IMG/VR virus record: IMGVR_UViG_3300031857_000005
Location: 240,366-304,365 of that record
Reading direction: 5' to 3' (one strand)
Length of the DNA stretch: 64,000 nt
Below the pieces are notes generated by a model. The model saw only the letters and a program-made list of their open reading frames with translations. It did no database searches and was not told the origin of the DNA. Below, piece after piece: positions 18,777 to 45,158 of this stretch (the stretch's first letter is position 1; each line of letters opens with the position of its first letter). The translations under genes and the position numbers were made by a program.

Positions 18777-21700
18777 ATGGCATTTTTAACGGATCAAATA
18801 CCAGCAACCGGGGTTAATTTAACTGATTTATTTCACATAGTGGATCCTAATGATTTATCACAAGGTAATCCTGCTGGATCATCATATAAAGCGTGTTTTC
18901 AGCAAGTACTTGGAGCATTAACGGGTGGAACATCTGTTATGATAGTTGGTTCTGGAATTGGTTCGGTTGAAAGATGTGGTAATAATAATGATGCAAGTGG
19001 GAACTACTCCACTGTAAGTGGTGGTAGAGTAAATACATCAAGTTGTAATTGGTCAACTGTAAGTGGGGGGTATTGTAACACATCAAGTGGGTGTTATTCG
19101 ACAGTAGGTGGCGGACAACAAAATGGTTCAACATCTAATAATTCAACTGTAAGTGGCGGGTATTGTAATACAATCTTAACAGGAGCAACAAACTCAACTA
19201 TAGGTGGAGGGAACTCCAATACAATACTAATAGGATCAACTTTAACAACGATTGGTGGTGGTGGTTTGAATACATCAAGCGGTTCTAGATCAACCGTAAG
19301 TGGTGGTGTTGGTAACACATCAAGTGGTGGTGGATCAACAGTTGGTGGTGGTCAAAGTAACGAATCAAATGGGGCTAACTCAACCGTAAGTGGAGGTTAT
19401 TATAATACATCAAGTGGTGACTGGTCAACAATTGGCGGTGGTAGTGGGAATACATCAAGTAATTATTTTTCAACAATTGGCGGTGGTAGAAGTAACACAT
19501 CAAGTGGGTGTTACTCAACCGTTGGTGGTGGTAAATGTAACACATCATCAGGTACTTATTACTCAACTATAAGTGGAGGATATCGTAATACATCAATTGG
19601 TAGTGAATCAACCATAGGTGGGGGGCGTTTTAATACCTCAAGCGGTTACTATTCAACTATAAGTGGAGGACGTTGTAACTCATCAATTGGTGCGGATTCA
19701 ACCATAAGTGGTGGTCTTAGTAACAAAACAAATAGTGACACATCAACCATAGGTGGTGGGTGTAATAATACAATATTAACTGGTTCAACAAGTTCATCAA
19801 TTGGTGGTGGTGAATGTAATACAATCTTAACAGGATCAACAAGTTCATCAATTGGTGGTGGTGAATGTAATACAATCTTAACAGGATCAACACATTCAAC
19901 AATTGGAGGGGGTGTGAGTAATACTTCAAGCGATTATTATTCAACCGTAGGTGGTGGTGCAAACAACACTTCAAGTGGAGGTAGATCAACCATAAGTGGG
20001 GGAGCAAGTAGTACATCAAGTGGATATTATTCAACCGTAGGTGGTGGTAGATGTAATAGATCGTTAGGGGATTCTACAACCGTAGGTGGTGGTCAATTTA
20101 ATAGGGCGTGTGGTCAAATATCAACAATAAGTGGGGGGCGAGCAAATATTTCGTGTGGAACATATAGTTCAGTCGGTGGTGGAAACGCTAATACGTCAAG
20201 TAGTTATGCATCAACTGTTGGAGGTGGATTCAGTAACACATCTTATGGTGTGTGTTCAACAGTAAGTGGTGGTCGTCAAAATACATCGGTTGGTGATACC
20301 TCAACGGTAAGTGGGGGTATAGGTAATACATCATTAGGAGCGTGCTCAGTAATTGGTGGGGGTGTTTGTAATACAAATATGTCTACGGGTGGTTTTATAG
20401 GATCAGGTTGTGGAAATACTTCGTGTGATGTTTATAGTTTAGTAGTTGGAGGTTATTTTAATAAAGTTAACGGTAAAGCTTCAACAGTTAGTGGAGGTTA
20501 TTGTAATACAATATTAGCTGGAGCAACAAGTTCAACCATTGGTGGTGGACAACAAAATACAATATTAGCATCAGCAGCAAACTCAACCATTGGTGGAGGT
20601 AGTGGTAACACAATAAGTAGTTTTTCATCAGTCGTAGTAGGTGGATGTTTAAACACGTCAAGTGGGGGATACTCATTTATCGGTGGTGGTAGAAGAAATG
20701 TGTCAATCGGTTTTATATCAACCGTAAGTGGAGGTTATTGTAACACATCAATCGGAGATTGCTCAACCGTAGGTGGTGGTAGAGGTAACACATCAAGTGG
20801 GTGTTATTCAACCGTTGGTGGGGGAACGCAAAATAAAAGTAATGGTGTAGTATCAACAATAAGTGGGGGTAGAACTAATACCGCATCAAATTATTTTACA
20901 TTTATTGGTGGAGGTAGAGGTAACACATCAAGTGGGTGTTATTCGACAATAGGTGGTGGATGTTTGAATCGATCTTTAGGTGTTGGATCAACAATAGGTG
21001 GTGGATTGCAAAATATAACAAGTGGTAATTGTTCGTCAATATTAGGAGGAATTAGTAATACATCAAATTGTAATGGATCAACCGTAGGTGGTGGTTGTCG
21101 TAATACTGCATCAAATTATTTTTCGTTTGTTGGTGGAGGACTACAAAATACAAATAATGGTGTTTGGGGTACCTTATCTGGAGGTATATGTAATAGACTT
21201 ATAGGTAACGGAGCATCAATTGGTGGTGGTTCTAACAATACTGCTTGTGGAGATTATTCGGTAATAAGTGGTGGAATATCGGGAACTACAACGGCAAGTA
21301 ATAATTTCATTGGTGGAGGAAGTAATAACACAACAACAGGAAACTACTCCTCAATTTTAGGTGGAGTATTTAACACCTCAATAGGAAATTATTCTTCAAT
21401 TTTAGGAGGTTCAGGAAATACCGTAACACATAATTGTTCATCGGCTTTTGGTGTTGGTATTACATCGGTTTCAGCGTGTACATTCCATACAAATTATTTA
21501 ACATTACAAAATACACCAGATACTGATCCGTCAAATACAAATTTCTTGGTGAGAGATACATCAACAGGTGTCGTTAAATCAAGAGATATTTCATTACCGT
21601 TGAATTATGCGACCTCCGCAATAACATCATCACAAACATTAACTTGGGATAAAAGTTATTGGGGGGTTAGTGGTTCATCAAATGTTGATTTAACATTACC

Positions 21701-21884
21701 GACAACAACATCGAAAGATGGTTATTATTTATTGATAAAAGATGAAGCAGGAACTTCTGGTTCATACAGAATAAGATTAACGCCAGCATCAGGATTGATT
21801 GATGGTAATTCATATGTTGATATGAATATAAACTATATGTCTCTTACTGTTATGGTGAGAAACGGAAATTGGTATATAATATGA
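18777..21884 (+). CDS. Gly/Ser-rich repeat tail fibre (beta-helix / YadA-head-like 15-aa repeats)
   Basis: About 50 tandem ST(V/I)(S/G)GGxxNTSSGxx repeats; C-terminal TLP...IKD..G...IDG fibre domain. Confidence 0.75.
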   Translation: MAFLTDQIPATGVNLTDLFHIVDPNDLSQGNPAGSSYKACFQQVLGALTGGTSVMIVGSGIGSVERCGNNNDASGNYSTVSGGRVNTSSCNWSTVSGGYCNTSSGCYSTVGGGQQNGSTSNNSTVSGGYCNTILTGATNSTIGGGNSNTILIGSTLTTIGGGGLNTSSGSRSTVSGGVGNTSSGGGSTVGGGQSNESNGANSTVSGGYYNTSSGDWSTIGGGSGNTSSNYFSTIGGGRSNTSSGCYSTVGGGKCNTSSGTYYSTISGGYRNTSIGSESTIGGGRFNTSSGYYSTISGGRCNSSIGADSTISGGLSNKTNSDTSTIGGGCNNTILTGSTSSSIGGGECNTILTGSTSSSIGGGECNTILTGSTHSTIGGGVSNTSSDYYSTVGGGANNTSSGGRSTISGGASSTSSGYYSTVGGGRCNRSLGDSTTVGGGQFNRACGQISTISGGRANISCGTYSSVGGGNANTSSSYASTVGGGFSNTSYGVCSTVSGGRQNTSVGDTSTVSGGIGNTSLGACSVIGGGVCNTNMSTGGFIGSGCGNTSCDVYSLVVGGYFNKVNGKASTVSGGYCNTILAGATSSTIGGGQQNTILASAANSTIGGGSGNTISSFSSVVVGGCLNTSSGGYSFIGGGRRNVSIGFISTVSGGYCNTSIGDCSTVGGGRGNTSSGCYSTVGGGTQNKSNGVVSTISGGRTNTASNYFTFIGGGRGNTSSGCYSTIGGGCLNRSLGVGSTIGGGLQNITSGNCSSILGGISNTSNCNGSTVGGGCRNTASNYFSFVGGGLQNTNNGVWGTLSGGICNRLIGNGASIGGGSNNTACGDYSVISGGISGTTTASNNFIGGGSNNTTTGNYSSILGGVFNTSIGNYSSILGGSGNTVTHNCSSAFGVGITSVSACTFHTNYLTLQNTPDTDPSNTNFLVRDTSTGVVKSRDISLPLNYATSAITSSQTLTWDKSYWGVSGSSNVDLTLPTTTSKDGYYLLIKDEAGTSGSYRIRLTPASGLIDGNSYVDMNINYMSLTVMVRNGNWYII
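18990..21430 (+). repeat. Coding tandem repeat array (about 45-nt period, some 51-nt units), including an exact 51-nt duplication at 19785-19886
   Basis: Recurrent AACACATCAAGTGG and TCAACCGTAGGTGGTGG; TCAACAAGTTCATCAATTGGTGGTGGTGAATGTAATACAATCTTAACAGGA occurs twice in tandem. Confidence 0.9.
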
Positions 21885-23101
21885 GTTTTATTTTTAATAA
21901 TCAAGTATCTTATAGTGACAGTGCAAATTTAGATGCATTTGGTAGGTTAAGAACTGCCGCAGTCCAAAATTTATTGGACATTAAACACGTATACGATAAA
22001 AATCCATTACAAGTAAATGAGGTTACCGCAGGAACTGCAACGTCAATTTTTAATCAACAATTTGCGAGAGTTAGAATGTCAACTGCGGCAAATAATGATT
22101 TAGTTATAAGACAATCAAAAACACACCCTATTTACCAACCAGGAAAAAGTCAATTATTCCAAGCAAGTTTCTCAAATTTTCAGTTAGAAACAAATGTCAT
22201 AAAAAGGGTGGGAGGATTCACCTCAACAACGGCATCTACATATAATTCGGTTTTTGATGGGTTCTTTTTAGAAAGTAATGGGGTAACAAACGAAATAAGT
22301 TTTCAAATATGGAGATCGGGAACTACGGTTTATAGTGCGGCAACAACCGTATGGAACACTAATGAATTTAACCCAATAGGTTTAGATTGGTCTAACACTA
22401 ATTTAATGTCAGTTGATTATCAATGGTTAGGTGTTGGTAGAATGAGATTTGGTTTGGATTTAGATGGAATATTAATTTATTTTACCGAACATAATTGTGC
22501 TAATAACGAACCAAATGTTTATATGTCATCACCAAATCAACCAATAAGGTATGAAATAAGACAAGTTGGTGTTGGTTCAGGAAGTTTTGATATGATATGT
22601 TCACAAGTATCAACCGAAGGAGCATTAAACGGACTATATTCCACTGTAGGAGTTATAAACTCAACCACTGCAGATTTAAATTCGTCAGGTACAAAATATC
22701 CATATATTGGTTATAGACTTAAACCAAGTTATAAATCAGTGACATCGCAATATAGTAGTTTGAGTATTTTAAATACCTCAAATGATAATTACTTAGTGAC
22801 TATTGAATTTAATCCTACATTATCTGCAACTCCAAGTTGGACAGATATACCAAATTCACCATTTCAATATTCAATATATAATGGGACTGTTACAACAACG
22901 ATAACATCACCAGGTCACATTATGTCGTCTTTAATTGGTGAATCAGGATCATCAGCACTTTCAACAATTAAAGTGGATGATAATCAAATTAGAGTTGGTT
23001 CTAATGTTGATGGAACACTTGATGAAATGTGGGTATGTATAACACCATTAAGTGCAAGTGCAACATTTTTGGGAACCGCAGAAGTATTATATTATTTATA
23101 A
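21881..23101 (+). CDS. Virion-associated beta-sandwich/lectin-like protein
   Basis: ATGA overlap puts the start at 21881. DAFGRLR, YQPGKSQ, DYQWLGVGRMRFG and PIRYEI motifs resemble a phage structural family. Confidence 0.6.
   Translation: MSFIFNNQVSYSDSANLDAFGRLRTAAVQNLLDIKHVYDKNPLQVNEVTAGTATSIFNQQFARVRMSTAANNDLVIRQSKTHPIYQPGKSQLFQASFSNFQLETNVIKRVGGFTSTTASTYNSVFDGFFLESNGVTNEISFQIWRSGTTVYSAATTVWNTNEFNPIGLDWSNTNLMSVDYQWLGVGRMRFGLDLDGILIYFTEHNCANNEPNVYMSSPNQPIRYEIRQVGVGSGSFDMICSQVSTEGALNGLYSTVGVINSTTADLNSSGTKYPYIGYRLKPSYKSVTSQYSSLSILNTSNDNYLVTIEFNPTLSATPSWTDIPNSPFQYSIYNGTVTTTITSPGHIMSSLIGESGSSALSTIKVDDNQIRVGSNVDGTLDEMWVCITPLSASATFLGTAEVLYYL
23093..23100 (+). promoter_or_regulatory. Putative late promoter (TATTTATA)
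   Basis: Recurrent motif upstream of ATG 23121. Confidence 0.5.
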
Positions 23102-23120
23102 AATAAAAATAGATTAAAAA

Positions 23121-24572
23121 ATGGCAAATCAAAAACTTACAGACAGAGTATTGGCAACGGGAGTCACATTAAATGATTTAATTCATATTGTAATTCCGAC
23201 AGATATAACTGACGATCCTGCGGGTTCATCATATAAAGCAACCGTTAGTCAGATGATGGACACTATAAGTGGTTCCACAATTATGGTTTTGGATGCAGGA
23301 ATTGGATCAACAATGAGATGTGATAATAATAATGAAGCGTCGGGAAGTTATTCAACAGTTAGTGGAGGTTATTGTAATACCTCAAGTGGAAATAAATCAA
23401 CTGTAAGTGGTGGATACCTTAATACATCGAGTAGTTATTACTCAACAGTTGGTGGTGGAGCGGCTAACACATCTAGTTGTGTTTATTCGACGGTAAGTGG
23501 TGGTCGTAACAACACATCAAGCGGTATTTATTCATTTATTGGTGGAGGATCCTTCAATAATAATAGTTCTTGTGGAAGTGTTATATCGGGTGGTGCAAAT
23601 AATTTAACAGGACCAACAGGTGTTATCTCAACTCTAAGTTCATATACTCCAAGTGCTGGATTAGGTCTTGCAGATGCGACTTACGGACCTTATTCTCAAA
23701 CAACAACAAGTGGTTATGGTGTTGGTGCGGATTTTACATTTGATGTTAGTGGTAATACAATAACTGGAGTTACAATCACAAATGGAGGTTTTGGATATAG
23801 TAATGGTGACACTATTTTTATTACAGGAACAACTTTTCCTGGTGGTACATCATCAAATGATGTTACATTAACTATTAATAATGTTTTAAGTAGTTATTAT
23901 TCAACCGTAAGTGGAGGACTAAATAATACATCAAGTGGAGATTGCTCAACCATAGGTGGAGGTAGAGGTAACACATCAAGTGGTAATGGTTCATTTGTTG
24001 GTGGCGGATCATTTAACAAATCAACTAATAATTTTTCAACAGTTGTAGGAGGTGCGGGTAACACATCAAGTTCTTATTATGTGACAATTGGTGGGGGAAA
24101 ATACAACACATCAAGTGCTTGTTACTCAACCGTAAGTGGTGGATATAGAAATACAACATTAACGGGGTCAACATATTCAATAATAGGTGGTGGTCGTAGT
24201 AACACATCAAGTGCTTCGTATTCAACAATAAGTGGTGGGTATTGTAATACAATTTTAACAGGATCAACAAGTACAACAATTGGTGGTGGTTATCAAAATA
24301 CAATATTAACAGGATCTACATATTCAACAATAAGTGGTGGTATATGTAACACATCAATTGGAATATCTTCGTCAATATTAGGTGGTTCTGGAAATACGGT
24401 TATACACGATTGTTCATTTATTGTTGGTAATGGAATAGCAACTTCTTGTCCTAATACGACATATATGAATTGTTTATCAATTATGGATTTACCAAATGAA
24501 TCGTCATTACCATTACCTTCAGGTTCTGTTTATTATTGTACGACAGGTTGTGGTATTTACTATGTTCCATAA
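23121..24572 (+). CDS. Second Gly-rich repeat tail fibre, paralogue of 18777-21884
   Basis: Homologous N-terminus (LTD..ATGV...DL.HIV.P.D....PAGSSYKA), the same 15-aa repeats, and an inserted GGFGYSNGDTIFITG domain. Confidence 0.75.
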   Translation: MANQKLTDRVLATGVTLNDLIHIVIPTDITDDPAGSSYKATVSQMMDTISGSTIMVLDAGIGSTMRCDNNNEASGSYSTVSGGYCNTSSGNKSTVSGGYLNTSSSYYSTVGGGAANTSSCVYSTVSGGRNNTSSGIYSFIGGGSFNNNSSCGSVISGGANNLTGPTGVISTLSSYTPSAGLGLADATYGPYSQTTTSGYGVGADFTFDVSGNTITGVTITNGGFGYSNGDTIFITGTTFPGGTSSNDVTLTINNVLSSYYSTVSGGLNNTSSGDCSTIGGGRGNTSSGNGSFVGGGSFNKSTNNFSTVVGGAGNTSSSYYVTIGGGKYNTSSACYSTVSGGYRNTTLTGSTYSIIGGGRSNTSSASYSTISGGYCNTILTGSTSTTIGGGYQNTILTGSTYSTISGGICNTSIGISSSILGGSGNTVIHDCSFIVGNGIATSCPNTTYMNCLSIMDLPNESSLPLPSGSVYYCTTGCGIYYVP

Positions 24573-24661: not shown

Positions 24662-26248
24662 ATGTCCAATTGTTATTGTTTAGAATTTAGTTTTGCAAAG
24701 GTTAATCAGTATGATTTAACCTATCAAGATTGTAGTGGAAACACTGTAACAGAAACATTCCAAAGTGGTACAACATACAATATATGTAGTGAAAATTTTG
24801 ATCCAATAACAAATTGTTTAGATATTGATTTTGAAGTTAAAGGACTCTGTGTTAATGGAGTTTGCCCTGGTGGATTATTTAAATATCAAAATGAATGCGA
24901 TGTAATAACAATATTCCCATTGGGAGTACAATGTTTAACTGAAAATCCAACAACAAGTAATAGTTTTGACGGTGTGGCATCTTTGTATATTACAGGAGGT
25001 ACACCACCATATTTTATATCATGGGAAAATGGTAATTATTCTCAAACATTAACAAATTTGGGTTCAGGAGAATATGATGCGGTTGTTACCGATTTTTATG
25101 GTGACTTTACCGCAAGAACAACTTGTTATTTAACCGCACCAAGTCCGACACCAACACCAACTCCTACACCAACTCCTACACCGATACCGGCATTTAGTGG
25201 TTTATGTTTAATTGTTGAAGGTAGAATAGGTAAAGATCCTTATCTTGAATTAATTGATTTTGGTTATAATGGGTATTATAATGGAAAACCAACTTGGACA
25301 TCAACACCTTCAGGTTATGATGTGGTATGGATGAGTGGTACAAGTCAGTGGGAAGTGTCAGGATGGACATACGGTAGTTTAGTTAATTTAAATCCAGCTA
25401 CACCACCTATTGCTGGATGGCAATCTATTGGTTCAGTACCACCAAATCCGTCAATATTATCGGTACAAATGAGTGAAGGAACTTGTGCAAGTCAAGACAT
25501 ATTGAGATATGAATTAACAGTTAACCAACCTACTTGTGTTCGTAAAGATGGTTTAGGTGGATGTATTAGTGACGGAAGTATAATATTTAATATTATTGAT
25601 GGAGTTCCACCATATGAGTATAGTATAGATGGATTCAACTTCTTCCCTAACCAACCTATCTTCCAAAGTCTATGTCCTGGGTTATACACAACAATTGTTA
25701 CAGACTCTTCAGGACAAACATTTAGTCAAATTGTGAATTTAATACAACCGGCAGCACCTCAAATATATGCACTAACATTATCACTAAACGCCACGTCAAC
25801 CGCATTTAATGTTACGGTTTCACCACAATTACCTGTAGGTACTACTCTTTCATTTGATTTAGTACATGAGAAATATTTTACAGAACAACCTCAATTTAAT
25901 GCGTACACTTGGAATAATGTGGTTACAGTAAATAAAAATATGATTCCTGTTCCATATAGTACAACCACTAATAGTGGGTCATCAAATGCTTTACCTGATA
26001 AAGTGTGTATTGGAGGTGTTGTTGTTGAGTCACTTACAACATTTACTTGGGATAATATAACTATGGTACAGGGAGACACTGTTAGTGGTACAATTAGTAA
26101 TCCAACACCAATATTGAATCTACCTTTAGAAACTCACTGTTTATCTGAAAAACATTCATATAATTTATATTTAAATGATGTAAAGTTAACTAACTGTCCT
26201 TGTTGTTCGGTAACCGTAATAAATAAACCGATAGGAAAAGTAGGGTAA
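24662..26248 (+). CDS. Cys-rich SprB-repeat virion protein with a Pro-Thr linker
   Basis: GGTPPY...LGSGEYDAVVTD and GVPPYEYSIDG...LCPGLYTTIVTDSSG SprB-like units; PTPTPTPTPTP linker. Confidence 0.65.
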   Translation: MSNCYCLEFSFAKVNQYDLTYQDCSGNTVTETFQSGTTYNICSENFDPITNCLDIDFEVKGLCVNGVCPGGLFKYQNECDVITIFPLGVQCLTENPTTSNSFDGVASLYITGGTPPYFISWENGNYSQTLTNLGSGEYDAVVTDFYGDFTARTTCYLTAPSPTPTPTPTPTPTPIPAFSGLCLIVEGRIGKDPYLELIDFGYNGYYNGKPTWTSTPSGYDVVWMSGTSQWEVSGWTYGSLVNLNPATPPIAGWQSIGSVPPNPSILSVQMSEGTCASQDILRYELTVNQPTCVRKDGLGGCISDGSIIFNIIDGVPPYEYSIDGFNFFPNQPIFQSLCPGLYTTIVTDSSGQTFSQIVNLIQPAAPQIYALTLSLNATSTAFNVTVSPQLPVGTTLSFDLVHEKYFTEQPQFNAYTWNNVVTVNKNMIPVPYSTTTNSGSSNALPDKVCIGGVVVESLTTFTWDNITMVQGDTVSGTISNPTPILNLPLETHCLSEKHSYNLYLNDVKLTNCPCCSVTVINKPIGKVG

Positions 26249-29436: not shown

Positions 29437-30547
29437 ATGGTGAACTCGGAGTTGGTGTTGGTGTTTGAGTCAATGTCGGAGTTGGTGTCGGAGTTAATGT
29501 AACACAAGGACAATCAATAAAAACTATATTAATGTTATTACCTACAGGTATCTTATATGATTTTACAGTAATTGTTGAACCACCATTTATGTTTATTACT
29601 TGAGTCTCGTTATTACTACAGTTTTTAATATTAAAAGTATTTGCAGTATATAGTAAATTAGTTACTTTATACTCACAACAAACATCAGGAGTTTGAGTTG
29701 GTGTTAATGTAGGTGTAGGTGTTGGTGTAGGTGTTGGAGTTGAACTAACAGGTGGAATACAAACAAGACATCCTCCTTCAGAAACTAAACCATTCTCAGT
29801 GTTCAAGACTATAATATCAACACCACTAATATTATCCGCAGTACCAATGTACTCAATACAAACATCTATCTCATTCACTTCCGCCTCATATACCATACCA
29901 ATTACTGGAGTACCACCTGTCGGGTTTAATATAACATCAGTGGTTGAATAAATAAATCCATTTAAACAATCTTTGAATTGTTTGCTATTTGGACATTTAA
30001 TATAATCATCAAGAGTGTTAAATGTTACTAAACCTGTATAATTACATGGTCTGGTAATTTCAGGTGAAGGTGTTGGAGTTAATGTTGGAGTTGGTGTTGG
30101 AGTTGGTGTATATGTAATACCCGAAACATTAATACCGATCCCACCACAAGGGTTTGTTGAGGTTGGTGTCATTGTTGGGGTTAATGTCGGAGTTGGTGTC
30201 GGAGTTGGAGTTTGTGTTGTGGGTACATCACAATCAAAAATCGCATCAAAATCTATTGAACAAGCAGCACTTGGTGATGGAGTTGGTGTAGGGCAAATAC
30301 CCGAACTAAAAAGTTCATCACATAAATCAGGACAAGAACTTACACAAGGTGATTTACCAAATAATAAACAATTTGGATCCCCTAAAGTTAATGCTAAACA
30401 CCATTGAGTTTGTCCTGTTGAATAATAAATAGTATATGTATCTCCTGTGAAATAATCATAACCCGCATCGTAAGTACCTGCGGAAAAATATGTACCATCA
30501 AAAGATGATGAAGTACCACTTACACAATATTGACCAAAACAAGACAT
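29435..30547 (-). CDS. Cys-rich, Pro-Thr-repeat putative virion protein
   Basis: About 22 Cys in 370 aa, several PTPTPT linkers, and TGxT motifs like the tail proteins. Confidence 0.65.
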   Translation of the reverse strand: MSCFGQYCVSGTSSSFDGTYFSAGTYDAGYDYFTGDTYTIYYSTGQTQWCLALTLGDPNCLLFGKSPCVSSCPDLCDELFSSGICPTPTPSPSAACSIDFDAIFDCDVPTTQTPTPTPTPTLTPTMTPTSTNPCGGIGINVSGITYTPTPTPTPTLTPTPSPEITRPCNYTGLVTFNTLDDYIKCPNSKQFKDCLNGFIYSTTDVILNPTGGTPVIGMVYEAEVNEIDVCIEYIGTADNISGVDIIVLNTENGLVSEGGCLVCIPPVSSTPTPTPTPTPTLTPTQTPDVCCEYKVTNLLYTANTFNIKNCSNNETQVININGGSTITVKSYKIPVGNNINIVFIDCPCVTLTPTPTPTLTQTPTPTPSSP

Positions 30548-38015: not shown

Positions 38016-38705
38016 ATGAGAGATAAGAAAATTTTGGTTAGGGATTTAGTTATTCATTTAAAAAAATTAAAGTTTGCAAAATATTTAGTTGAGTATATTG
38101 ATAACGAAATTCCTTTAACCATATTCCCTATTGCGAATAGGGAGGGGTTGACAATTAATGAATGGGTGAAAGATGTTGAAGATGATGTAAGACAACACAC
38201 AGTTTTGACTACAACCAGATTATCATATGATGGTGTTAAATCATTTTTAGTTTACAAATTAAATACAATTCTCTCAACCTATAACGACGCAAATATTAAA
38301 GTACTTAAAATTACTGAGATTGTTAATACTGAAGAAATTGAGGGTAAATCTTTTGACGCTATATTTGAGTTTAACGGTGAAATTATTATAATTGAAATTA
38401 AAGTAACCCAAAGCGATACCGCATTTACAGGTGCAACACATACAACATCAAAAGCGGATATTTTTTTATTAATATCATTATCAATTAATCGTGATAAAAA
38501 AGTTAAGGAAAGTGAAAAATATGTTGATGGTATTTTCGGTATGTTAATTAACTTGGATAAAGATTTTTGGAAAGGTGAGGCTAAAAATAATAGTAGTTTT
38601 ACTACACTTAAATTTTTATCAAATATTGACTATAGTGAAAATATTTTTTGTGGTAGTCTTAAAAACAATAAAGTATACCAAAAACTAATTTTTGAAAAAA
38701 TATGA
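38016..38705 (+). CDS. Putative PD-(D/E)XK restriction-type endonuclease
   Basis: SFDAIFEFNGEIIIIEIKVT (D...ExK); ATGA-coupled to a DNA MTase. Confidence 0.55.
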   Translation: MRDKKILVRDLVIHLKKLKFAKYLVEYIDNEIPLTIFPIANREGLTINEWVKDVEDDVRQHTVLTTTRLSYDGVKSFLVYKLNTILSTYNDANIKVLKITEIVNTEEIEGKSFDAIFEFNGEIIIIEIKVTQSDTAFTGATHTTSKADIFLLISLSINRDKKVKESEKYVDGIFGMLINLDKDFWKGEAKNNSSFTTLKFLSNIDYSENIFCGSLKNNKVYQKLIFEKI

Positions 38706-39613
38706 ATGAAGTAATTTTAGGTAATGCGATTGAAGTATTACAAAGATATGAGGATAATACATTTGATTTAACTGTAACATCACCACCGTATGATAACTTA
38801 AGAACTTATAATGGAAAAATTAAGGATGAGGTTGTCTTTGAAGATGGATTTAGTTTCCCATTTGTGGAAATGGCTCGTGAGTTATATAGAGTAACCAAGA
38901 AGGGTGGTGTTGTTATTTGGGTGGTAAATGATCAAGTAAAAAATGGTGGAGAAACTGGTAGTTCATTCAGACAAGCACTTAAATTTAAGGAGATTGGATT
39001 TACATTGTACGATACGATGATTTATCATAAGAATGGAGCCCCATTTCCTGAAACAGGTAGATACTCACAAGTATTTGAATATATGTTCGTCCTTTCAAAA
39101 GGGAAACCAAAAACGGTTAATCTATTAAAAGATAAACCAAATAGATGGGCGGGACATAGTAATTTTGGTGATCCATCAAAAAGAGAAAAAGACGGAAACC
39201 TTAAAAAGGTTGACAAGTTTGTTGTATCTGAATTCGGTACAAGGTATAATGTATGGTATGTTAATAATGGTAAAGGGTTCTCATCCAAAGACGACATTGC
39301 ATTCCAACATCCTGCAATATTTCCGGAATCATTGGCTGAGGATCATATTCTATCTTGGAGTAATGAAGGTGATATAGTATTAGATCCTATGTGTGGTAGT
39401 GGAACGACATTGAAGATGGCGAAACTTAATAACAGGAATTATTTGGGTATTGACATCAATGAAGAATATGTCGATTTATCAAATCTAAGAATACAAAATA
39501 TTGAACCATACACTAATGAAACACCTAATCCAAAGGTTAAATTCCTTTTATCTAAAGAAGATGCTTTATTGAAAAGAAAAAATAATAAAGAATCTAAAAA
39601 TTTGTTGGATTAA
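38702..39613 (+). CDS. DNA methyltransferase, N4/N6 family beta class (SPPY, probably N4-cytosine)
   Basis: TSPPY, then HPAIFP and VLDPMCGSGTT. Confidence 0.92.
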   Translation: MNEVILGNAIEVLQRYEDNTFDLTVTSPPYDNLRTYNGKIKDEVVFEDGFSFPFVEMARELYRVTKKGGVVIWVVNDQVKNGGETGSSFRQALKFKEIGFTLYDTMIYHKNGAPFPETGRYSQVFEYMFVLSKGKPKTVNLLKDKPNRWAGHSNFGDPSKREKDGNLKKVDKFVVSEFGTRYNVWYVNNGKGFSSKDDIAFQHPAIFPESLAEDHILSWSNEGDIVLDPMCGSGTTLKMAKLNNRNYLGIDINEEYVDLSNLRIQNIEPYTNETPNPKVKFLLSKEDALLKRKNNKESKNLLD

Positions 39614-40186: not shown

Positions 40187-40987
40187 ATGAAGGAAAAAGG
40201 AACAGGAATGCCCATTAATCAGGATGAAATCTCTCACTACCTAAAGGATATTAGGAAGATTAAAGTTATGACACCTGAAAGGGAAAAAGAATTATCTAAA
40301 CTTATGATGTCGGATACTTTAACTGACAAACAACGAAAACAAGTTGAACAGGAGTTGTTAACAGGTAATTTACGATTTGTTATTACCGTTGCAAAACAAT
40401 ATCAAAATCAAGGTTTGGATTTTCCTGATTTGGTTGCTGAGGGTAACTTAGGGTTATTGAAAGCAATTAAAAACTTTGATTGGAGTAAAAATTTGAGATT
40501 TATTTCATATGCCGTTTGGTGGGTTAAACAATCTATTATTCAGTCTTTAAATGACAATGCGAGAACAATTAGACTTCCTGTAAATGTTGTTCAGGAACTT
40601 CATAAAGCTAAAAAAGAAATTGAGAATAATGGAGGAAAACTATCGGATAAATTCTCATCTTTACCATCAATGATTGACTTAGATATGAATATCAATGATG
40701 AGGGAGATACATTCCTTGATATGATACCAAATATGGATGCAGACGCTCCTGATGCGGCTTTTAATACTGCGGACATTCTTAAAGAAAAATTAATCAATAC
40801 ACTTAGTGTTTTAGATGAAAGAGAACGAGTAATTATTGAGGATTATTTTGGACTTAGTGGAACACCAAGAACTTTGGAAGATATTGGAGGTGATTTTGGT
40901 TTAACTAAAGAACGAGTAAGACAGATTAAAGAAAGAGCTTTGAGAAGGTTACGAAATGAGAGTTCTGAATTATTTGATTATATCTAA
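40187..40987 (+). CDS. RNA polymerase sigma70 factor, Bacteroidota primary-sigma-like (no region 1.1)
   Basis: NLRFVITVAKQYQNQGL, EGNLGL, FISYAVWW, RTIRLP, TLEDIG...TKERVRQIKE. Confidence 0.93.
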   Translation: MKEKGTGMPINQDEISHYLKDIRKIKVMTPEREKELSKLMMSDTLTDKQRKQVEQELLTGNLRFVITVAKQYQNQGLDFPDLVAEGNLGLLKAIKNFDWSKNLRFISYAVWWVKQSIIQSLNDNARTIRLPVNVVQELHKAKKEIENNGGKLSDKFSSLPSMIDLDMNINDEGDTFLDMIPNMDADAPDAAFNTADILKEKLINTLSVLDERERVIIEDYFGLSGTPRTLEDIGGDFGLTKERVRQIKERALRRLRNESSELFDYI

Positions 40988-42110: not shown

Positions 42111-43199
42111 ATGAAAGAAAAATTTTTACCTTGGTTTTTATTATTTTGTGCGATAGGTTTATCGGGAACTGCTGCCTATTATAGTGTTGTTGGATTATCA
42201 ATTGTTTTTATTGGCGTTGCAATACCAGTAATAATAATGGGTTCATTTTTGGAGATATCAAAAATTGCTATTGCAACATATCTTCATGACAAATGGAAGG
42301 AAACATATGGCGCGTTGAAGATATACATGACGATTGCATTGGTGACTTTATCAATTATAACCTCTTTAGGGATTTATGGATTATTGAGTACAGGGTTTCA
42401 GGGAAACATTGCAAAACTTGAAATAAATGAGAAAAAAGTCAAAAATGTTGAAGTTAAAAAGAAACGATTTGAAGAAATAAAAGACGAACTCTCTAAAGAA
42501 AAAACAATTCTTAATGGGGATATAACAAAGTTGAGAGACGGACTTTCAAATAACACCACCACACAATCTGTGGACGGTAGAACTGGACAAGTAGTTACAA
42601 GAGCAAATAATGCGAATAGACGATCATTTGAGACACAACTATCACAAGCACAAGTTAGAAGAGACACTATCGCAAAACGAATTGATTCAATGAATGATAG
42701 TATTACTAAACTTGACATTGAAATTTTAGATATGGAATCTCAAGAAATATCTGGTAGTGAACTTGGGGCTATTAAGTATGTAAGTGAACTTCTTGATTGG
42801 GAAATTAAAAGGACTGCAAATTTATTTATTTTAATTTTAATATTTGTATTCGATCCTTTAGCAATCACATTGGTTATTGCAACAAACCAAGCATTTAAGT
42901 CAAGAAGAAAAGAAGAAGACACCCCCCAAGTACCCATTAACTACCCTCCAAGTACCCCCCAAGTTAATGATACCGATGAACTACCGATGAACTACCGATC
43001 AACTACCGATCAAGTCAATGAGTATAGTTTTATTGATTATGATATATCCAAGGAGTTATCAGATGATATTGAAAATGATACGCCAAAACCATCATCCCCT
43101 GATTTAGTTGTTGATGAATTGTTTGATACAATTGATAAATATGAATTAGATATTAATGAAGTAAAAAATAAAAAAAGATTAGTATATAAAAAAGAATGA
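42111..43199 (+). CDS. Multi-pass membrane protein with a long coiled coil
   Basis: Three N-terminal TMs (AAYYSVVGL, GIYGLLS), coiled coil, ELGAIKY, then TM FVFDPLAITL. Confidence 0.75.
   Translation: MKEKFLPWFLLFCAIGLSGTAAYYSVVGLSIVFIGVAIPVIIMGSFLEISKIAIATYLHDKWKETYGALKIYMTIALVTLSIITSLGIYGLLSTGFQGNIAKLEINEKKVKNVEVKKKRFEEIKDELSKEKTILNGDITKLRDGLSNNTTTQSVDGRTGQVVTRANNANRRSFETQLSQAQVRRDTIAKRIDSMNDSITKLDIEILDMESQEISGSELGAIKYVSELLDWEIKRTANLFILILIFVFDPLAITLVIATNQAFKSRRKEEDTPQVPINYPPSTPQVNDTDELPMNYRSTTDQVNEYSFIDYDISKELSDDIENDTPKPSSPDLVVDELFDTIDKYELDINEVKNKKRLVYKKE
42921..43015 (+). repeat. Two blocks of four 11-bp direct repeats, consensus ACCnnnnAA(G/C)T
   Basis: ACCCCCCAAGT ACCCATTAACT ACCCTCCAAGT ACCCCCCAAGT taatgat ACCGATGAACT ACCGATGAACT ACCGATCAACT ACCGATCAAGT. 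Confidence 0.9.
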
Positions 43200-43792
43200 T
43201 TGATGTTGTAAAATACGGAGAATTTAAACCGACGGGAAAACAAAAGAAGAAAAAACAAATAATTTTATCTCATACATCTAGAGATGTTAAAAACTATTTA
43301 ATGTCTTTAAAGTACCGATATAACGGAAAATACGACAAAGTTCCAAATTATATTGTTAACCGAGAAGGTAAAATTTTAAAACTTCTAAATGATAATGAAC
43401 ACTCTAATTATTTTTCAGAACCCAATATAAATAGGAACTCAATCATAGTATGTTTAGAGAATTTAGGATGGATGGAAAAAGAACCATTAAAAAATTCACA
43501 CATTAATTGGATTGGTAATATTTATAAGGAGAAGATATATGAAAAAAAGTGGAGAGATTACTTTTTTTGGCAACCATATACTGAAATTCAGATAGAAAAA
43601 ACTGCCGAATTATGTAATCATTTAATGAAAGAACTCTCTATAACAAAAGAATGTATCGGACATAATACTAAAATAAATGGTGTTGAAAGATATGAAGGTA
43701 TTGTGACTAAAAGTAATTTTGATAGTGAATTTACTGATGTTAGTCCGGCTTTTAATTTTGAACAATTTATAAAGCTAATTGAAAATGAATAA
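43196..43792 (+). CDS. Amidase_2 (N-acetylmuramoyl-L-alanine amidase)-like protein with a degenerate Zn site
   Basis: QIILSHT, NYIVNREGKI, NRNSIIVCLENLG, YTEIQI, TDVSPAF. Confidence 0.7.
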   Translation: MIDVVKYGEFKPTGKQKKKKQIILSHTSRDVKNYLMSLKYRYNGKYDKVPNYIVNREGKILKLLNDNEHSNYFSEPNINRNSIIVCLENLGWMEKEPLKNSHINWIGNIYKEKIYEKKWRDYFFWQPYTEIQIEKTAELCNHLMKELSITKECIGHNTKINGVERYEGIVTKSNFDSEFTDVSPAFNFEQFIKLIENE

Positions 43793-44399
43793 TTACGAGG
43801 AACTAAAAAAATTATTAGAATCATCAAGAAGATTACTTGGGGGGGATTTATTAAACGAAGAGTCTAATAGAATTAGAAAAAGTTATGGTATGATAACTGA
43901 ACAGTCTAACCCAACAACTGATATAACAAAAAAAATTAATCCATTAGGGGACTCAGAAGAAGAAATTGAATATGAGACTGCTGATAGCGGTGAAGAAGAA
44001 ACAGAGAGTAAACCTGAAAAGAAAAAAGCATATAGAATTTCGGGCGGAATTTTAGTTCTTCATGGAACAGATAGTACTGATATACAATTAACAACCGATG
44101 ATAAAATCGCATTCCAAGAAAGTATGGATGAGTTTGTTGCGGAAGTGGCGGAAATTGTGGACTTCAATAAACTAAATGTTTATGAAAATAATGTAGAATG
44201 GTCAGGTAAAATTACAGAATTGGATCTTGAGTTCTTCTTCTCAATTGGTGAAACTAAAGGGGTATACATAAATGGTACTATGATTAAGTTGGATGATGAA
44301 TTCTTAGAATTTGTTAATAAACTACAAACATACTACGAGAAATTTAAATCTAAGTGGTCTAAAGTGATTGCATCAAAAAAGAAAACACCTGAAAAATGA
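43785..44399 (+). CDS. Hypothetical protein, possibly head-associated
   Basis: ATG 43785; LLE, LLNE and ITE sites near the N-terminus. Confidence 0.6.
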   Translation: MNNYEELKKLLESSRRLLGGDLLNEESNRIRKSYGMITEQSNPTTDITKKINPLGDSEEEIEYETADSGEEETESKPEKKKAYRISGGILVLHGTDSTDIQLTTDDKIAFQESMDEFVAEVAEIVDFNKLNVYENNVEWSGKITELDLEFFFSIGETKGVYINGTMIKLDDEFLEFVNKLQTYYEKFKSKWSKVIASKKKTPEK

Positions 44400-44749
44400 A
44401 ACAATTCTTAAATACCAATTTTAAATACATCCTATTTGTTGGGGTTGGATTATTTGTTATGTACTTTATGGTTTATTTATTTACACCAAAACCTGAAATG
44501 TCAGAATTAGATAAATATAAATTAGAACAATTAGATAAAGACATTGACTCAATTTTAAAAAAACAACAACTGCTTGATAAAAGAATCTTAGAATATAAGA
44601 CAGAACTAAGTAAGATTGACTCAACAATTGCACAAGTCAGAAACCAAAAAACTATAATAAAAGAATATTATAAAGAAAAAGGTGAAGAAATAACAGGAAT
44701 GAAACCATCTCAAATTGACAGTTTATTCCATAAAAGATATAAGTATTAA
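44396..44749 (+). CDS. N-terminal TM + coiled coil protein (i-spanin-like)
   Basis: YILFVGVGLFVMYFMVYLF TM followed by heptads; near the amidase. Confidence 0.55.
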   Translation: MKQFLNTNFKYILFVGVGLFVMYFMVYLFTPKPEMSELDKYKLEQLDKDIDSILKKQQLLDKRILEYKTELSKIDSTIAQVRNQKTIIKEYYKEKGEEITGMKPSQIDSLFHKRYKY

Positions 44750-44750
44750 G

Positions 44751-45158
44751 ATGAAAAATTTATTAATTACATTATTGTTATTCGTTCCATTGTTATCATT
44801 TGGACAAGTTAAAAAGGACACAACACAGATTTGTTTCCCATATAGTGTTGGAAAACAAATTGCGTTAGATTTAAATAAATTAGATCAGTTAACTGAAGTA
44901 CTTAAATTAACTGAAACAGAACTTAAAGAAACTCAAAACAAAGTAAGTGTTCAAAACGATATTATCACTACAATGGAACTTAAAGAAGATAATTATGAGT
45001 TACAAATTCAAAAGGAACAAGAAAAATTTGGAATTGTTGAAGAACAAAATGAAGGATTAAGAAAAGATATTAAAAAAATTAAAACCAAAAATACAGTTAT
45101 TGAAATTGTTGGAGGGGCGATAATTGGTGCATTAACCTATATACTTATTTTTAAATAA
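44751..45158 (+). CDS. Secreted coiled-coil protein with a C-terminal hydrophobic anchor (spanin-like partner)
   Basis: MKNLLITLLLFVPLLSFG|Q signal peptide; C-terminal VGGAIIGALTYILIFK. Confidence 0.55.
   Translation: MKNLLITLLLFVPLLSFGQVKKDTTQICFPYSVGKQIALDLNKLDQLTEVLKLTETELKETQNKVSVQNDIITTMELKEDNYELQIQKEQEKFGIVEEQNEGLRKDIKKIKTKNTVIEIVGGAIIGALTYILIFK

What the first reader, a model, noticed from the sequence alone, without database searches (positions are those of the whole stretch)
42921..43015. Iteron-like 11-bp array hidden inside a membrane-protein gene
Seen: two blocks of four 11-bp units (ACCnnnnAA(G/C)T) separated by 7 nt. Because 11 is not a multiple of 3, the peptide (TPQVPINYPPSTPQVNDTDELPMNYRSTTDQV) does not repeat unit by unit, so the pattern is at DNA level. 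The period is about one helical turn and the tract is C-rich in an AT-rich genome. Inference: a phased protein-binding array (origin iterons, partition or packaging site), or a slippage cassette that frameshifts the cytoplasmic tail.
Basis: partly seen in the sequence, partly recalled or inferred. Interest (0 to 1): 0.6.

Follow-up and report, generated by a model that had tools for sequence, protein, structure and literature searches.

The report
Three-frame 11-base repeat linker
The 11-base repeats are real, but they look like a slippage-prone coding repeat read in all three frames to make a floppy linker in a phage membrane protein, not a protein-binding site; near-identical arrays also sit in unrelated phage and bacterial genes.

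Summary
There are two arrays of four 11-nt units (42921-42964 and 42972-43015), far beyond chance and unique in the 304-kb phage genome. Both start in codon phase 0. Three units make 11 codons, so each array encodes a 15-residue peptide in the predicted disordered cytoplasmic tail of a conserved membrane protein. That gene's stop overlaps the start of the endolysin gene.

Relatives carry the purer form (ACCGACCAAGT)x4, which encodes TDQVPTKYRPSTDQV. It is identical in lineages whose synonymous sites elsewhere are about 55% different. It sits next to 12-nt arrays whose copy number varies freely.

The same array also lies in frame in other phage genes. In a few bacterial genomes it lies just before the Fic-like_C domain of Fic, AlbA_2 and DUF4062 proteins. 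Some arrays are intergenic.

Otherwise identical gene copies differ by one or two units, which frameshifts the downstream part. One phage relative has five units and a truncated tail.

I found no support for an origin, partition or packaging site. The best reading is a hypermutable coding minisatellite at a module junction. What conserves the unit is unexplained. I found no description of it in the papers I could search.

The parts
42111..43199 (+). ORF of 362 aa, a phage membrane protein. It has N-terminal transmembrane helices, a long coiled-coil hairpin, a last transmembrane helix and a disordered acidic tail that ends in KRLVYKKE.
   Evidence: ORF list. No Pfam or PHROG family. More than 4500 homologues, almost all unnamed. 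AF2 model: helices 5-57, 62-147, 167-215 and 230-266; residues 266-355 have pLDDT below 50. Hydropathy.
42798..42908 (+). Last transmembrane helix region (residues 230-266, containing FDPLAITLVIATNQAF). The KSRRKEED stretch that follows it suggests the tail is cytoplasmic.
   Evidence: This stretch is invariant across relatives. The topology is inferred from the positive-inside rule.
42921..42964 (+). Block 1: four 11-nt units, a decayed ACCCCCCAAGT type. With base 42965 it encodes TPQVPINYPPSTPQV (residues 271-285).
   Evidence: Equivalent blocks occur in relatives L009, L013, L026, L155 and others.
42965..42971 (+). A 7-nt spacer: the last base of the Val285 codon plus the codons for N286 and D287. 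It puts block 2 back into codon phase 0.
   Evidence: Read directly from the sequence.
42972..43015 (+). Block 2: four 11-nt units, a lineage-specific variant of ACCGACCAAGT. With base 43016 it encodes TDELPMNYRSTTDQV (residues 288-302).
   Evidence: Close strains differ here by conversion-like changes without any length change.
43017..43196 (+). The rest of the tail: an acidic segment and the conserved C-terminal KRLxYxK motif. It is lost if either array gains or loses one or two units.
   Evidence: The whole tail has a net charge of -13.
43196..43792 (+). Amidase_2 (N-acetylmuramoyl-L-alanine amidase) endolysin gene. Its ATG overlaps the stop of the membrane-protein gene (ATGA).
   Evidence: Pfam PF01510, E = 8e-11. 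Coordinates.

Best explanation
The tract is a coding minisatellite. An 11-nt unit (family consensus ACCGACCAAGT, scaffold ACC-N4-AAGT) was multiplied by replication slippage or template switching. Because 11 is not divisible by 3, successive units are read in the three frames in turn. Three units make 11 codons, and four units plus one base make a 15-residue peptide. Only 1, 4, 7... units keep the downstream frame. In the window both arrays are in the in-frame four-unit state and partly decayed. They encode an unstructured Pro/Thr/Gln-rich spacer between the last membrane helix and the acidic C-terminal tail of a membrane protein in the lysis gene cluster. On this reading the helical-turn period is a by-product of the unit length, not a binding register. 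Units stay alike through repeated slippage and conversion between units, limited by the need to avoid stop codons and to keep linker-like residues in all three frames. Shown: the anatomy, the conservation, the unit-number polymorphism in relatives and the predicted disorder. Inferred: the slippage and conversion mechanism, the cytoplasmic location and the lysis role.
For: (1) Both blocks start in phase 0 and lie in a tail with pLDDT below 50 and no secondary structure.
(2) Of 58 distinct relatives' tails, 21 have an 11-nt run, 30 have 12-nt runs (TPQV, TIHD) and 19 have neither. The 12-nt copy number differs between near-identical relatives (3 against 5), whereas the 11-nt arrays are held at about 4 units.
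(3) The only in-frame states seen are n = 1 and n = 4. L051 has n = 5 and stops right after the array, with the next 135 codons of tail open in another frame.
(4) Otherwise identical bacterial gene copies differ by exactly one unit (0 mismatches in 338 nt) or two units (1 mismatch in 338 nt), which frameshifts the downstream domain.
(5) Close strains of the window phage show conversion-like changes: a variant base moves exactly 11 nt (42947/42958), and there is a two-base change TG>CC in unit 2.
(6) Unit variants respect the frames. A T at unit position 7 appears only where it does not create TAA (L017). In the window, G at position 7 appears only in units where it does not create TGA.
(7) The codons are rare for this genome, which fits a DNA-level origin rather than peptide-driven codon choice.
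(8) The array is absent from some relatives, including one on a 296-kb contig.
Against: Ordinary slippage does not explain why the same unit sequence is kept across lineages whose four-fold sites differ by 47-65%. It also does not explain why the same array sits in unrelated genes of phages and bacteria, or why some arrays are intergenic. The ACC-N4-AAGT scaffold is 53 against 3 relative to a reversed control in viral contigs, although many of the hits are related to one another. These points leave room for a sequence-specific factor or function. How units are homogenised without passing through frameshifted intermediates is inferred, not shown. No raw reads were available, so slippage was not seen in the window phage itself.
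Confidence: 0.6

Rival explanations
1. It is an adaptive phase-variation (contingency) switch. Gain or loss of a unit reversibly removes the C-terminal tail and uncouples translation of the overlapping endolysin gene, so a phage population would hold variants with different lysis behaviour. In bacteria the same device would switch the Fic-like_C domain of defence-type proteins on and off.
For: Out-of-frame alleles that differ only in unit number exist: L051/L099 (n = 5 against 4), L108 (5 against 6), L137 (3 against 5) and L123. In the window, a change of one or two units would truncate the protein to 272-324 aa. The stop of this gene overlaps the endolysin start.
Against: In the phage family only one allele out of about 60 array-bearing sequences seen is out of frame, and it comes from a single contig. 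The window's units are impure (72% and 96%). There was no length difference in contigs from four other samples. Three to seven copies of an 11-nt unit should slip far less often than classical contingency repeats (my inference). Frameshift alleles could simply be deleterious mutants.
Confidence: 0.15
2. It is a recombination junction. The conserved array would be a short block of shared DNA at module boundaries that lets diverged genomes exchange what lies on either side, spreading to new sites by microhomology.
For: Breakpoints fall at the array. L101 and L119 are 88% identical in the 60 nt upstream and 22% downstream. L130 and L155 are 32% and 77%. L089 and L133 are 38% and 78%. Sister lineages on the N-terminal tree carry different tail modules. 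In bacteria the array always sits at the junction before Fic-like_C, in three different architectures. In a phage glycosyltransferase it lies between two domains. In L192/L197 it is the spacer between two large ORFs. In the small Pyr_excise-like gene it abuts a native sequence resembling the unit, and the window genome's own orthologue has no array.
Against: Mosaicism around any fast-evolving linker would look similar. No recombination event has been reconstructed. Arrays of 33-77 bp are near the lower limit for homologous recombination (my knowledge). Selection for promoting recombination is hard to demonstrate.
Confidence: 0.15
3. It is a phased protein-binding array: origin iterons, a parC-like centromere or a pac site, with one binding site per helical turn.
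For: The period is 11 bp and there are two clusters of four. There is DNA-level conservation that includes synonymous sites. The scaffold is enriched over a reversed control. Some arrays are intergenic. Precedents for functional arrays inside genes, such as lambda ori in gene O and P1 pac, are from my memory.
Against: Cumulative GC skew tracks gene strand and shows no inflection at the site. The neighbouring genes encode a sigma factor, a methylase and an amidase, not a replication initiator, ParM/ParR or terminase. The array is missing in several relatives and sits in other genes in related phages. Neighbouring arrays use a 12-nt spacing with variable copy number. The window's block 2 has lost the AAGT part of the scaffold in three units. 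In the coding cases I examined the array lies in the sense orientation with stops avoided, which points to translation as the constraint. G000 has no Fic-like_C domain that could bind it.
Confidence: 0.05
4. It is a rare-codon cluster selected to slow ribosomes just after the last transmembrane helix is made, to help membrane insertion.
For: The array's codon usage is in the bottom 0.24% of the genome, and it starts about 5 codons after the helix ends.
Against: Selection for slow codons would not keep one exact 11-nt unit or its periodicity. The same array occurs in soluble proteins and between genes.
Confidence: 0.03

Closest known systems
Simple-sequence-repeat contingency loci (for example the CTCTT repeats in Neisseria opa genes, or the tetranucleotide repeats in Haemophilus and in Type III mod genes; surveys in PMC5909438 and PMC7383803)
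   Same: It is a tandem repeat inside a coding region whose unit length is not a multiple of three, and unit-number changes shift the frame. Alleles in both states occur in nature.
   Different: The unit is 11 nt and there are only 3-7 copies. The array is translated in all three frames into a defined 11-residue peptide. The switch removes a C-terminal module rather than the whole protein. The same unit recurs in unrelated genes of phages and bacteria. High-frequency reversible switching has not been shown.
Ohno and Epplen's oligomer repeats whose length is not a multiple of three (PNAS 1983, 80:3391; listed as reference 38 of PMC6821194; the content is from my memory)
   Same: Three consecutive copies are read in three frames, so the peptide period equals the unit length in residues. 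The array itself is open in every frame.
   Different: Theirs was a hypothesis about primordial genes. Here it is a living, polymorphic linker, and the sequence downstream of the array is not immune to frameshift.
Plasmid R1 parC centromere: two sets of five iterons bound by ParR (PMC2241845; the 11-bp unit length is from my memory)
   Same: Two clusters of direct repeats of about one helical turn each.
   Different: parC is intergenic, flanks the par promoter and sits next to parM and parR. Here the array is inside an ORF, no ParM-like gene was found (although the control gave no signal), and the array is dispensable in relatives.
Lambda ori iterons inside gene O and the P1 pac hexamer array inside pacA (from my memory)
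   Same: Repeated DNA sites hidden in a coding region, in lambda within a linker-coding part.
   Different: Those arrays lie in the gene of the protein that uses them, or next to it, and are fixed in position. This one moves between genes and varies in presence.
Rickettsia palindromic elements, selfish DNA inserted in frame into protein genes (Ogata et al. 2000, from my memory)
   Same: The same short DNA element is found in frame in unrelated protein-coding genes, adding a surface or linker peptide. There is an insertion polymorphism between orthologues.
   Different: RPEs are 100-150 bp and palindromic. This element is a direct tandem repeat of 33-77 bp with no inverted ends and low copy number (1-3 per genome).
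Boundary or linker sequences at module junctions of mosaic lambdoid phages (Clark et al. 2001, from my memory)
   Same: A short conserved DNA block at the junction between exchangeable modules.
   Different: Those are mostly intergenic and not tandemly repeated. A role in recombination here is only inferred.

Membership tests
Replication-origin iterons | Several phased direct repeats | tested here: met
   Two arrays of four 11-nt units.
Replication-origin iterons | Located at an origin: a strand-skew switch, an adjacent initiator gene or an unwinding element | tested here: not met
   Cumulative GC skew is monotonic through the site and follows gene strand. The neighbours are a sigma factor, a methylase, an SbcC-like protein and an amidase.
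Replication-origin iterons | Conserved in place among relatives | tested here: not met
   19 of 58 distinct tails have no periodic tract. The same array sits in other genes of related phages.
Replication-origin iterons | Bound by an initiator protein | not testable with these tools
   Needs EMSA or ChIP.
Type II partition centromere (parC-like) | Repeat clusters flanking the promoter of an adjacent parM/parR operon | tested here: not met
   The array is inside an ORF. There is no StbA_N/ParM match in the genome (the control genomes gave no signal either, so this is weak). The neighbouring genes are unrelated.
Phase-variable simple-sequence-repeat (contingency) locus | Tandem repeat in a coding region with a unit that is not a multiple of three | tested here: met
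Phase-variable simple-sequence-repeat (contingency) locus | Unit-number polymorphism that toggles the reading frame between otherwise like alleles | tested here: inconclusive
   Met in relatives and in the bacterial genes. Not seen for the window's own phage in contigs of four runs. No raw reads were available.
Phase-variable simple-sequence-repeat (contingency) locus | High, reversible switching rate with a phenotypic consequence | not testable with these tools
   Needs fluctuation assays or deep amplicon sequencing.
11-nt ACC-N4-AAGT coding array family (defined here) | Units matching the scaffold, 11-nt period, sense orientation, read through without a stop | tested here: met
   Block 1 matches in three of four units. 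Block 2 has AACT in three units and AAGT in the last. Orthologous arrays in relatives are the pure form.
Holin or other lysis-timing membrane protein (for the host gene) | Small membrane protein encoded next to the endolysin gene | tested here: inconclusive
   The gene overlaps the Amidase_2 gene, and the Pelagibacter phage Mosig homologue follows a glucosaminidase gene. But at 362 aa with a coiled coil it is atypical, no holin family matched, and in Flavobacterium phage immuto a separate holin is annotated.

The most novel reading that the evidence does not exclude
ACC-N4-AAGT 11-nt arrays (core GACCAAGT) are a distinct, portable DNA module shared between certain phages and bacterial Fic, AlbA_2 and DUF4062 proteins that end in Fic-like_C. 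The module would be a frame-cycling linker that spreads to new genes by microhomology. It would act as a built-in on/off and module-swapping device at domain boundaries. Its unit sequence would be held constant by something beyond slippage, either a dedicated binding or processing factor or three-frame coding constraint.
Probability: 0.2. Interest if true: 0.85.

Novelty: new variant of a known kind. Interest (0 to 1): 0.62.

Why it matters
If the main reading holds, this is a clear natural case of a repeat unit that is not a multiple of three being translated in all three frames as a working protein linker. Its copy number is locked to 3n+1 by the reading frame, and natural alleles show the lock being broken.

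The wider pattern is the more interesting part. The same 11-nt unit is kept letter for letter in lineages whose silent sites are close to saturated. It sits at module junctions of unrelated phage proteins, and just before the Fic-like_C domain of some bacterial Fic, AlbA_2 (Schlafen-like) and DUF4062 proteins, where one-unit changes switch that domain out of frame. I suspect, but did not test, that these are defence-type proteins. If so, this would be an undescribed hypermutable or recombinogenic device shared by phages and host defence genes. It would be directly testable by amplicon sequencing and recoding experiments.

The array also hints that the host of this 304-kb freshwater phage belongs to the Bacteroidota.

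Tried and rejected
- **Origin, partition or packaging site:** rejected for the reasons given under that rival.
- **RNA element:** the fold of 42890-43050 is no better than shuffles (z = -1.13), and no Rfam family matches.
- **Family assignment of the membrane protein:** nothing in Pfam or PHROGs. The Atlas gave only unnamed viral clusters and generic coiled-coil look-alikes.
- **blastn of the region against cultured phages:** no match. tblastn found 25-33% identical 'hypothetical proteins' in Flavobacterium, Pelagibacter, Microcystis, Xanthomonas and other large phages.
- **Read-level length variation:** only assembled contigs were on offer, so rare variants and coverage could not be assessed. 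No indel was seen in four samples.
- **Other copies in the window's genome:** none.
- **Fic-like_C in the phage genome:** none.
- **Orthologue of the array-bearing glycosyltransferase in the window genome:** only a weak partial match, so there was no clean comparison with and without the array.
- **A sample of 400 further genomes of the same phylum as one bacterial carrier:** none holds two units. The exact unit is therefore rare in bacteria (15 of 185,579 species genomes), and I do not call it widespread there.
- **The truncated five-unit phage allele:** it rests on one contig. An assembly error cannot be excluded, though a 55-nt array is shorter than a typical short read (my inference).
- **Literature:** the peptide strings were absent from about 8.4 million papers, and the 11-mer appeared only in unrelated papers. 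No paper links Fic-like_C, HATPase_c_4 or DUF4062 to tandem repeats, and none describes 11-nt phase-variable repeats.
- **G-quadruplex or i-motif from the C-runs of block 1 and the TPQV arrays:** considered but not tested. The commoner ACCGACCAAGT unit lacks such runs.
- **Not used:** the large profile search and complex prediction, because no claim depended on them.

Full report
**Where the window lies.** The window is the last 64 kb of a 304,365-bp virus record judged complete. It has 31% G+C and nearly all genes on one strand. The finding lies in the ORF 42111-43199 (362 aa).

The sequence shows four 11-nt units at 42921-42964, a 7-nt spacer, and four more units at 42972-43015.
- Tandem Repeats Finder reports both arrays, at 72% and 96% matches.
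- Lag-11 identity is 24/33 for block 1 and 31/33 for block 2. The maximum in 2000 codon shuffles of the gene was 23/33.
- Only four regions of the genome reach 24/33, and two of them are these blocks. Adjacent motif pairs occur nowhere else in the genome.
- Both blocks start in codon phase 0. Each is 44 nt plus one base, or 15 codons: TPQVPINYPPSTPQV, then N and D, then TDELPMNYRSTTDQV. The peptide therefore repeats with an 11-residue period, because three units make 11 codons.
- The codons used are among the rarest stretches in the genome (bottom 0.24%).

**The host gene.** An AlphaFold model built on 41 homologues gives N-terminal membrane helices, a long helical hairpin and helices at 230-266. 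Residues 266-355 have pLDDT below 50 and no secondary structure. The arrays (residues 271-302) therefore lie in a predicted disordered tail. The tail is acidic (net charge -13) and ends in KRLVYKKE.
- The stop codon overlaps the ATG of an Amidase_2 endolysin gene.
- No family matched the membrane protein.
- Distant homologues in cultured Flavobacterium, Pelagibacter, Microcystis and Xanthomonas phages are all annotated as hypothetical. The Pelagibacter phage copy follows a glucosaminidase gene.
- I take it to be a membrane protein of the lysis gene cluster, with low confidence about its exact role.

**Relatives.** Eighty related loci gave 58 distinct tails. The first 266 residues are conserved and the tail is hypervariable. 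Three kinds of short repeat follow the last helix:
- 12-nt units ACCCCCCAAGTT (TPQV), in 2-5 copies.
- 12-nt units ACCATACATGAT (TIHD), in 2-4 copies.
- An 11-nt unit ACCGACCAAGT, in about four copies, encoding TDQVPTKYRPSTDQV.

The 12-nt copy number differs between almost identical relatives, whereas the 11-nt arrays stay at four units. That is expected if only 1, 4 or 7 units keep the frame. Of the 58 tails, 21 have a strong 11-nt run, 30 have a strong 12-nt run and 19 have neither. The array is therefore dispensable.

**DNA-level conservation.** Several lineages carry four perfect units. Yet four-fold degenerate sites in the N-terminal part of the same genes differ by 47-65% between these lineages. 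Among 16 distinct arrays, four-fold sites inside the unit are almost invariant (0-1 variants at five of the six such sites; the sixth, column 18, has five), while the base just after the fourth unit varies in 8 of 16. Where units do vary, they respect the frames:
- A T at unit position 7 occurs only in units where it does not make TAA.
- In the window, G at position 7 occurs only where it does not make TGA.

The window's block 2 shows a change at position 6 in all four units, which looks like concerted change. Close strains (about 98% identical) have no indel, but they show conversion-like differences: a variant base that moves exactly 11 nt, and an adjacent two-base change.

**Frameshift alleles.**
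- L051 has five 11-nt units where its sister L050 has four. The ORF stops right after the array, and 135 further codons, ending in the usual C-terminal motif, are open in another frame. This rests on one contig.
- In the window, gain or loss of one or two units would truncate the protein to 272-324 aa.

**The array occurs elsewhere.** An exact scan for three units found 17 viral, 15 genomic and 39 metagenomic stretches. Besides the membrane protein, the array lies in frame in several other places:
- A phage multi-domain glycosyltransferase, between two domains.
- A loop of a small Pyr_excise-like phage protein found on about 30 contigs. The window genome's own orthologue has no array there, and the native DNA at that spot resembles one unit.
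- Bacterial proteins of three architectures: DUF4062-HATPase_c_4, AlbA_2-HATPase_c_4 and Fic. In each the array sits just before the Fic-like_C domain.

The bacterial carriers are mostly Bacteroidota, plus one Elusimicrobiota bin. They hold 1-3 arrays each. The exact unit is rare in bacteria: none of 400 further genomes of that phylum has it.

Two pairs of otherwise identical bacterial gene copies differ only by one unit (0 mismatches in 338 nt) or two units (1 mismatch in 338 nt). Both changes put Fic-like_C out of frame.

**The scaffold beyond this one unit.**
- The general scaffold repeated four times gave 53 viral stretches against 3 for a reversed control. Many of the 53 are related to one another, but at least a dozen contexts are independent.
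- Higher-GC contigs carry CGG- or TGG-GACCAAGT units that encode GTKSGPSRDQV-like peptides.
- Some arrays are intergenic. One forms the spacer between two large ORFs.

**Module junctions.** Pairs of phage loci are near-identical on one side of the array and unrelated on the other (88% against 22%; 32% against 77%). Sister lineages on the N-terminal tree carry different tail modules.

**Interpretation.** The best-supported reading is a coding minisatellite, made and kept homogeneous by slippage and conversion between units. It is read in three frames as a disordered linker, with unit number constrained by the frame.
- The protein-binding reading fails on position, conservation of place, neighbouring genes and skew.
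- An adaptive switch and a recombination junction remain possible.
- What holds the unit sequence constant across such distances, and how it reaches new genes, is not explained.
- I found no description of this array in the papers I could search.

Noticed in passing
L192:3973-4037 and L197:1523-1587: An array of ACCGACTAAGT units forms the whole 57-nt spacer between a 1034-aa ORF and a 769-aa ORF. The stop codon (TAA) lies in the first unit and the ATG comes right after the last unit. It looks as if a linker between two domains had turned into a gene boundary.
   Followed up: partly
L186:2337-2380, L205:5119-5162, L213:5119-5162, L219:5899-5942: Four perfect ACCGAGCAAGT units lie in intergenic DNA of higher-GC viral contigs. 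The same short flanks (GTGAAGGTGACTACTC on one side, AGTGAGTAGGACT on the other) recur in different surroundings. The nature of this element is unknown.
   Followed up: no
L094:430-560 (same as L132): The array is flanked on both sides by a direct repeat of about 17 nt (CAAAAGTTTACTATA). This could be a duplication or an insertion footprint.
   Followed up: no
G000:C1:117234-117704 (L156) compared with L093, L097 and about 30 viral contigs: A small Pyr_excise-like protein of related phages carries the 11-nt array in one loop. The window phage's own copy has five ordinary residues there instead.
   Followed up: yes
window 40187-40987: A phage-encoded sigma-70-type factor (regions 1.2, 2 and 4) lies two genes upstream of the membrane-protein gene.
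   Followed up: no
window 38702-39613: An N6/N4 DNA methyltransferase gene (PF01555, E = 9e-43). Its target site is unknown. The array junction AAGTACC contains GTAC.
   Followed up: no
window 44396-45158: Downstream of the endolysin gene are a 117-aa protein with one N-terminal membrane helix plus a coiled coil, and an overlapping 147-aa protein with a signal-like N-terminus and a C-terminal membrane helix. They could be a spanin-like pair.
   Followed up: no
window 18777-24572: Large ORFs contain 45-, 51-, 90- and 96-nt tandem repeats rich in Gly, Ser, Thr and Asn codons. They are probably fibre or beta-helix structural proteins.
   Followed up: no
window 25137-25188 and 29697-30212: Further short in-frame repeats with periods of 6, 12 and 18 nt (units CACCAA/ACACCAACTCCT and GTTGGT). 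These are ordinary multiple-of-three linkers and contrast with the 11-nt arrays.
   Followed up: no
whole record G000: Host hint: the exact array is shared almost only with Bacteroidota genomes (Flavobacterium, Fluviicola, Cytophaga, Prevotella and others). Among the best-scoring cultured-phage homologues of the membrane protein are those of Flavobacterium phages. The record comes from lake-water samples.
   Followed up: partly
L104:100-300: One bacterial Fic-like_C gene holds two unit types in a row, ACCGACCAAGT and ACCGGGGAAGT, which encode TDQVPTKYRPS and then TGEVPGKYRGS.
   Followed up: no
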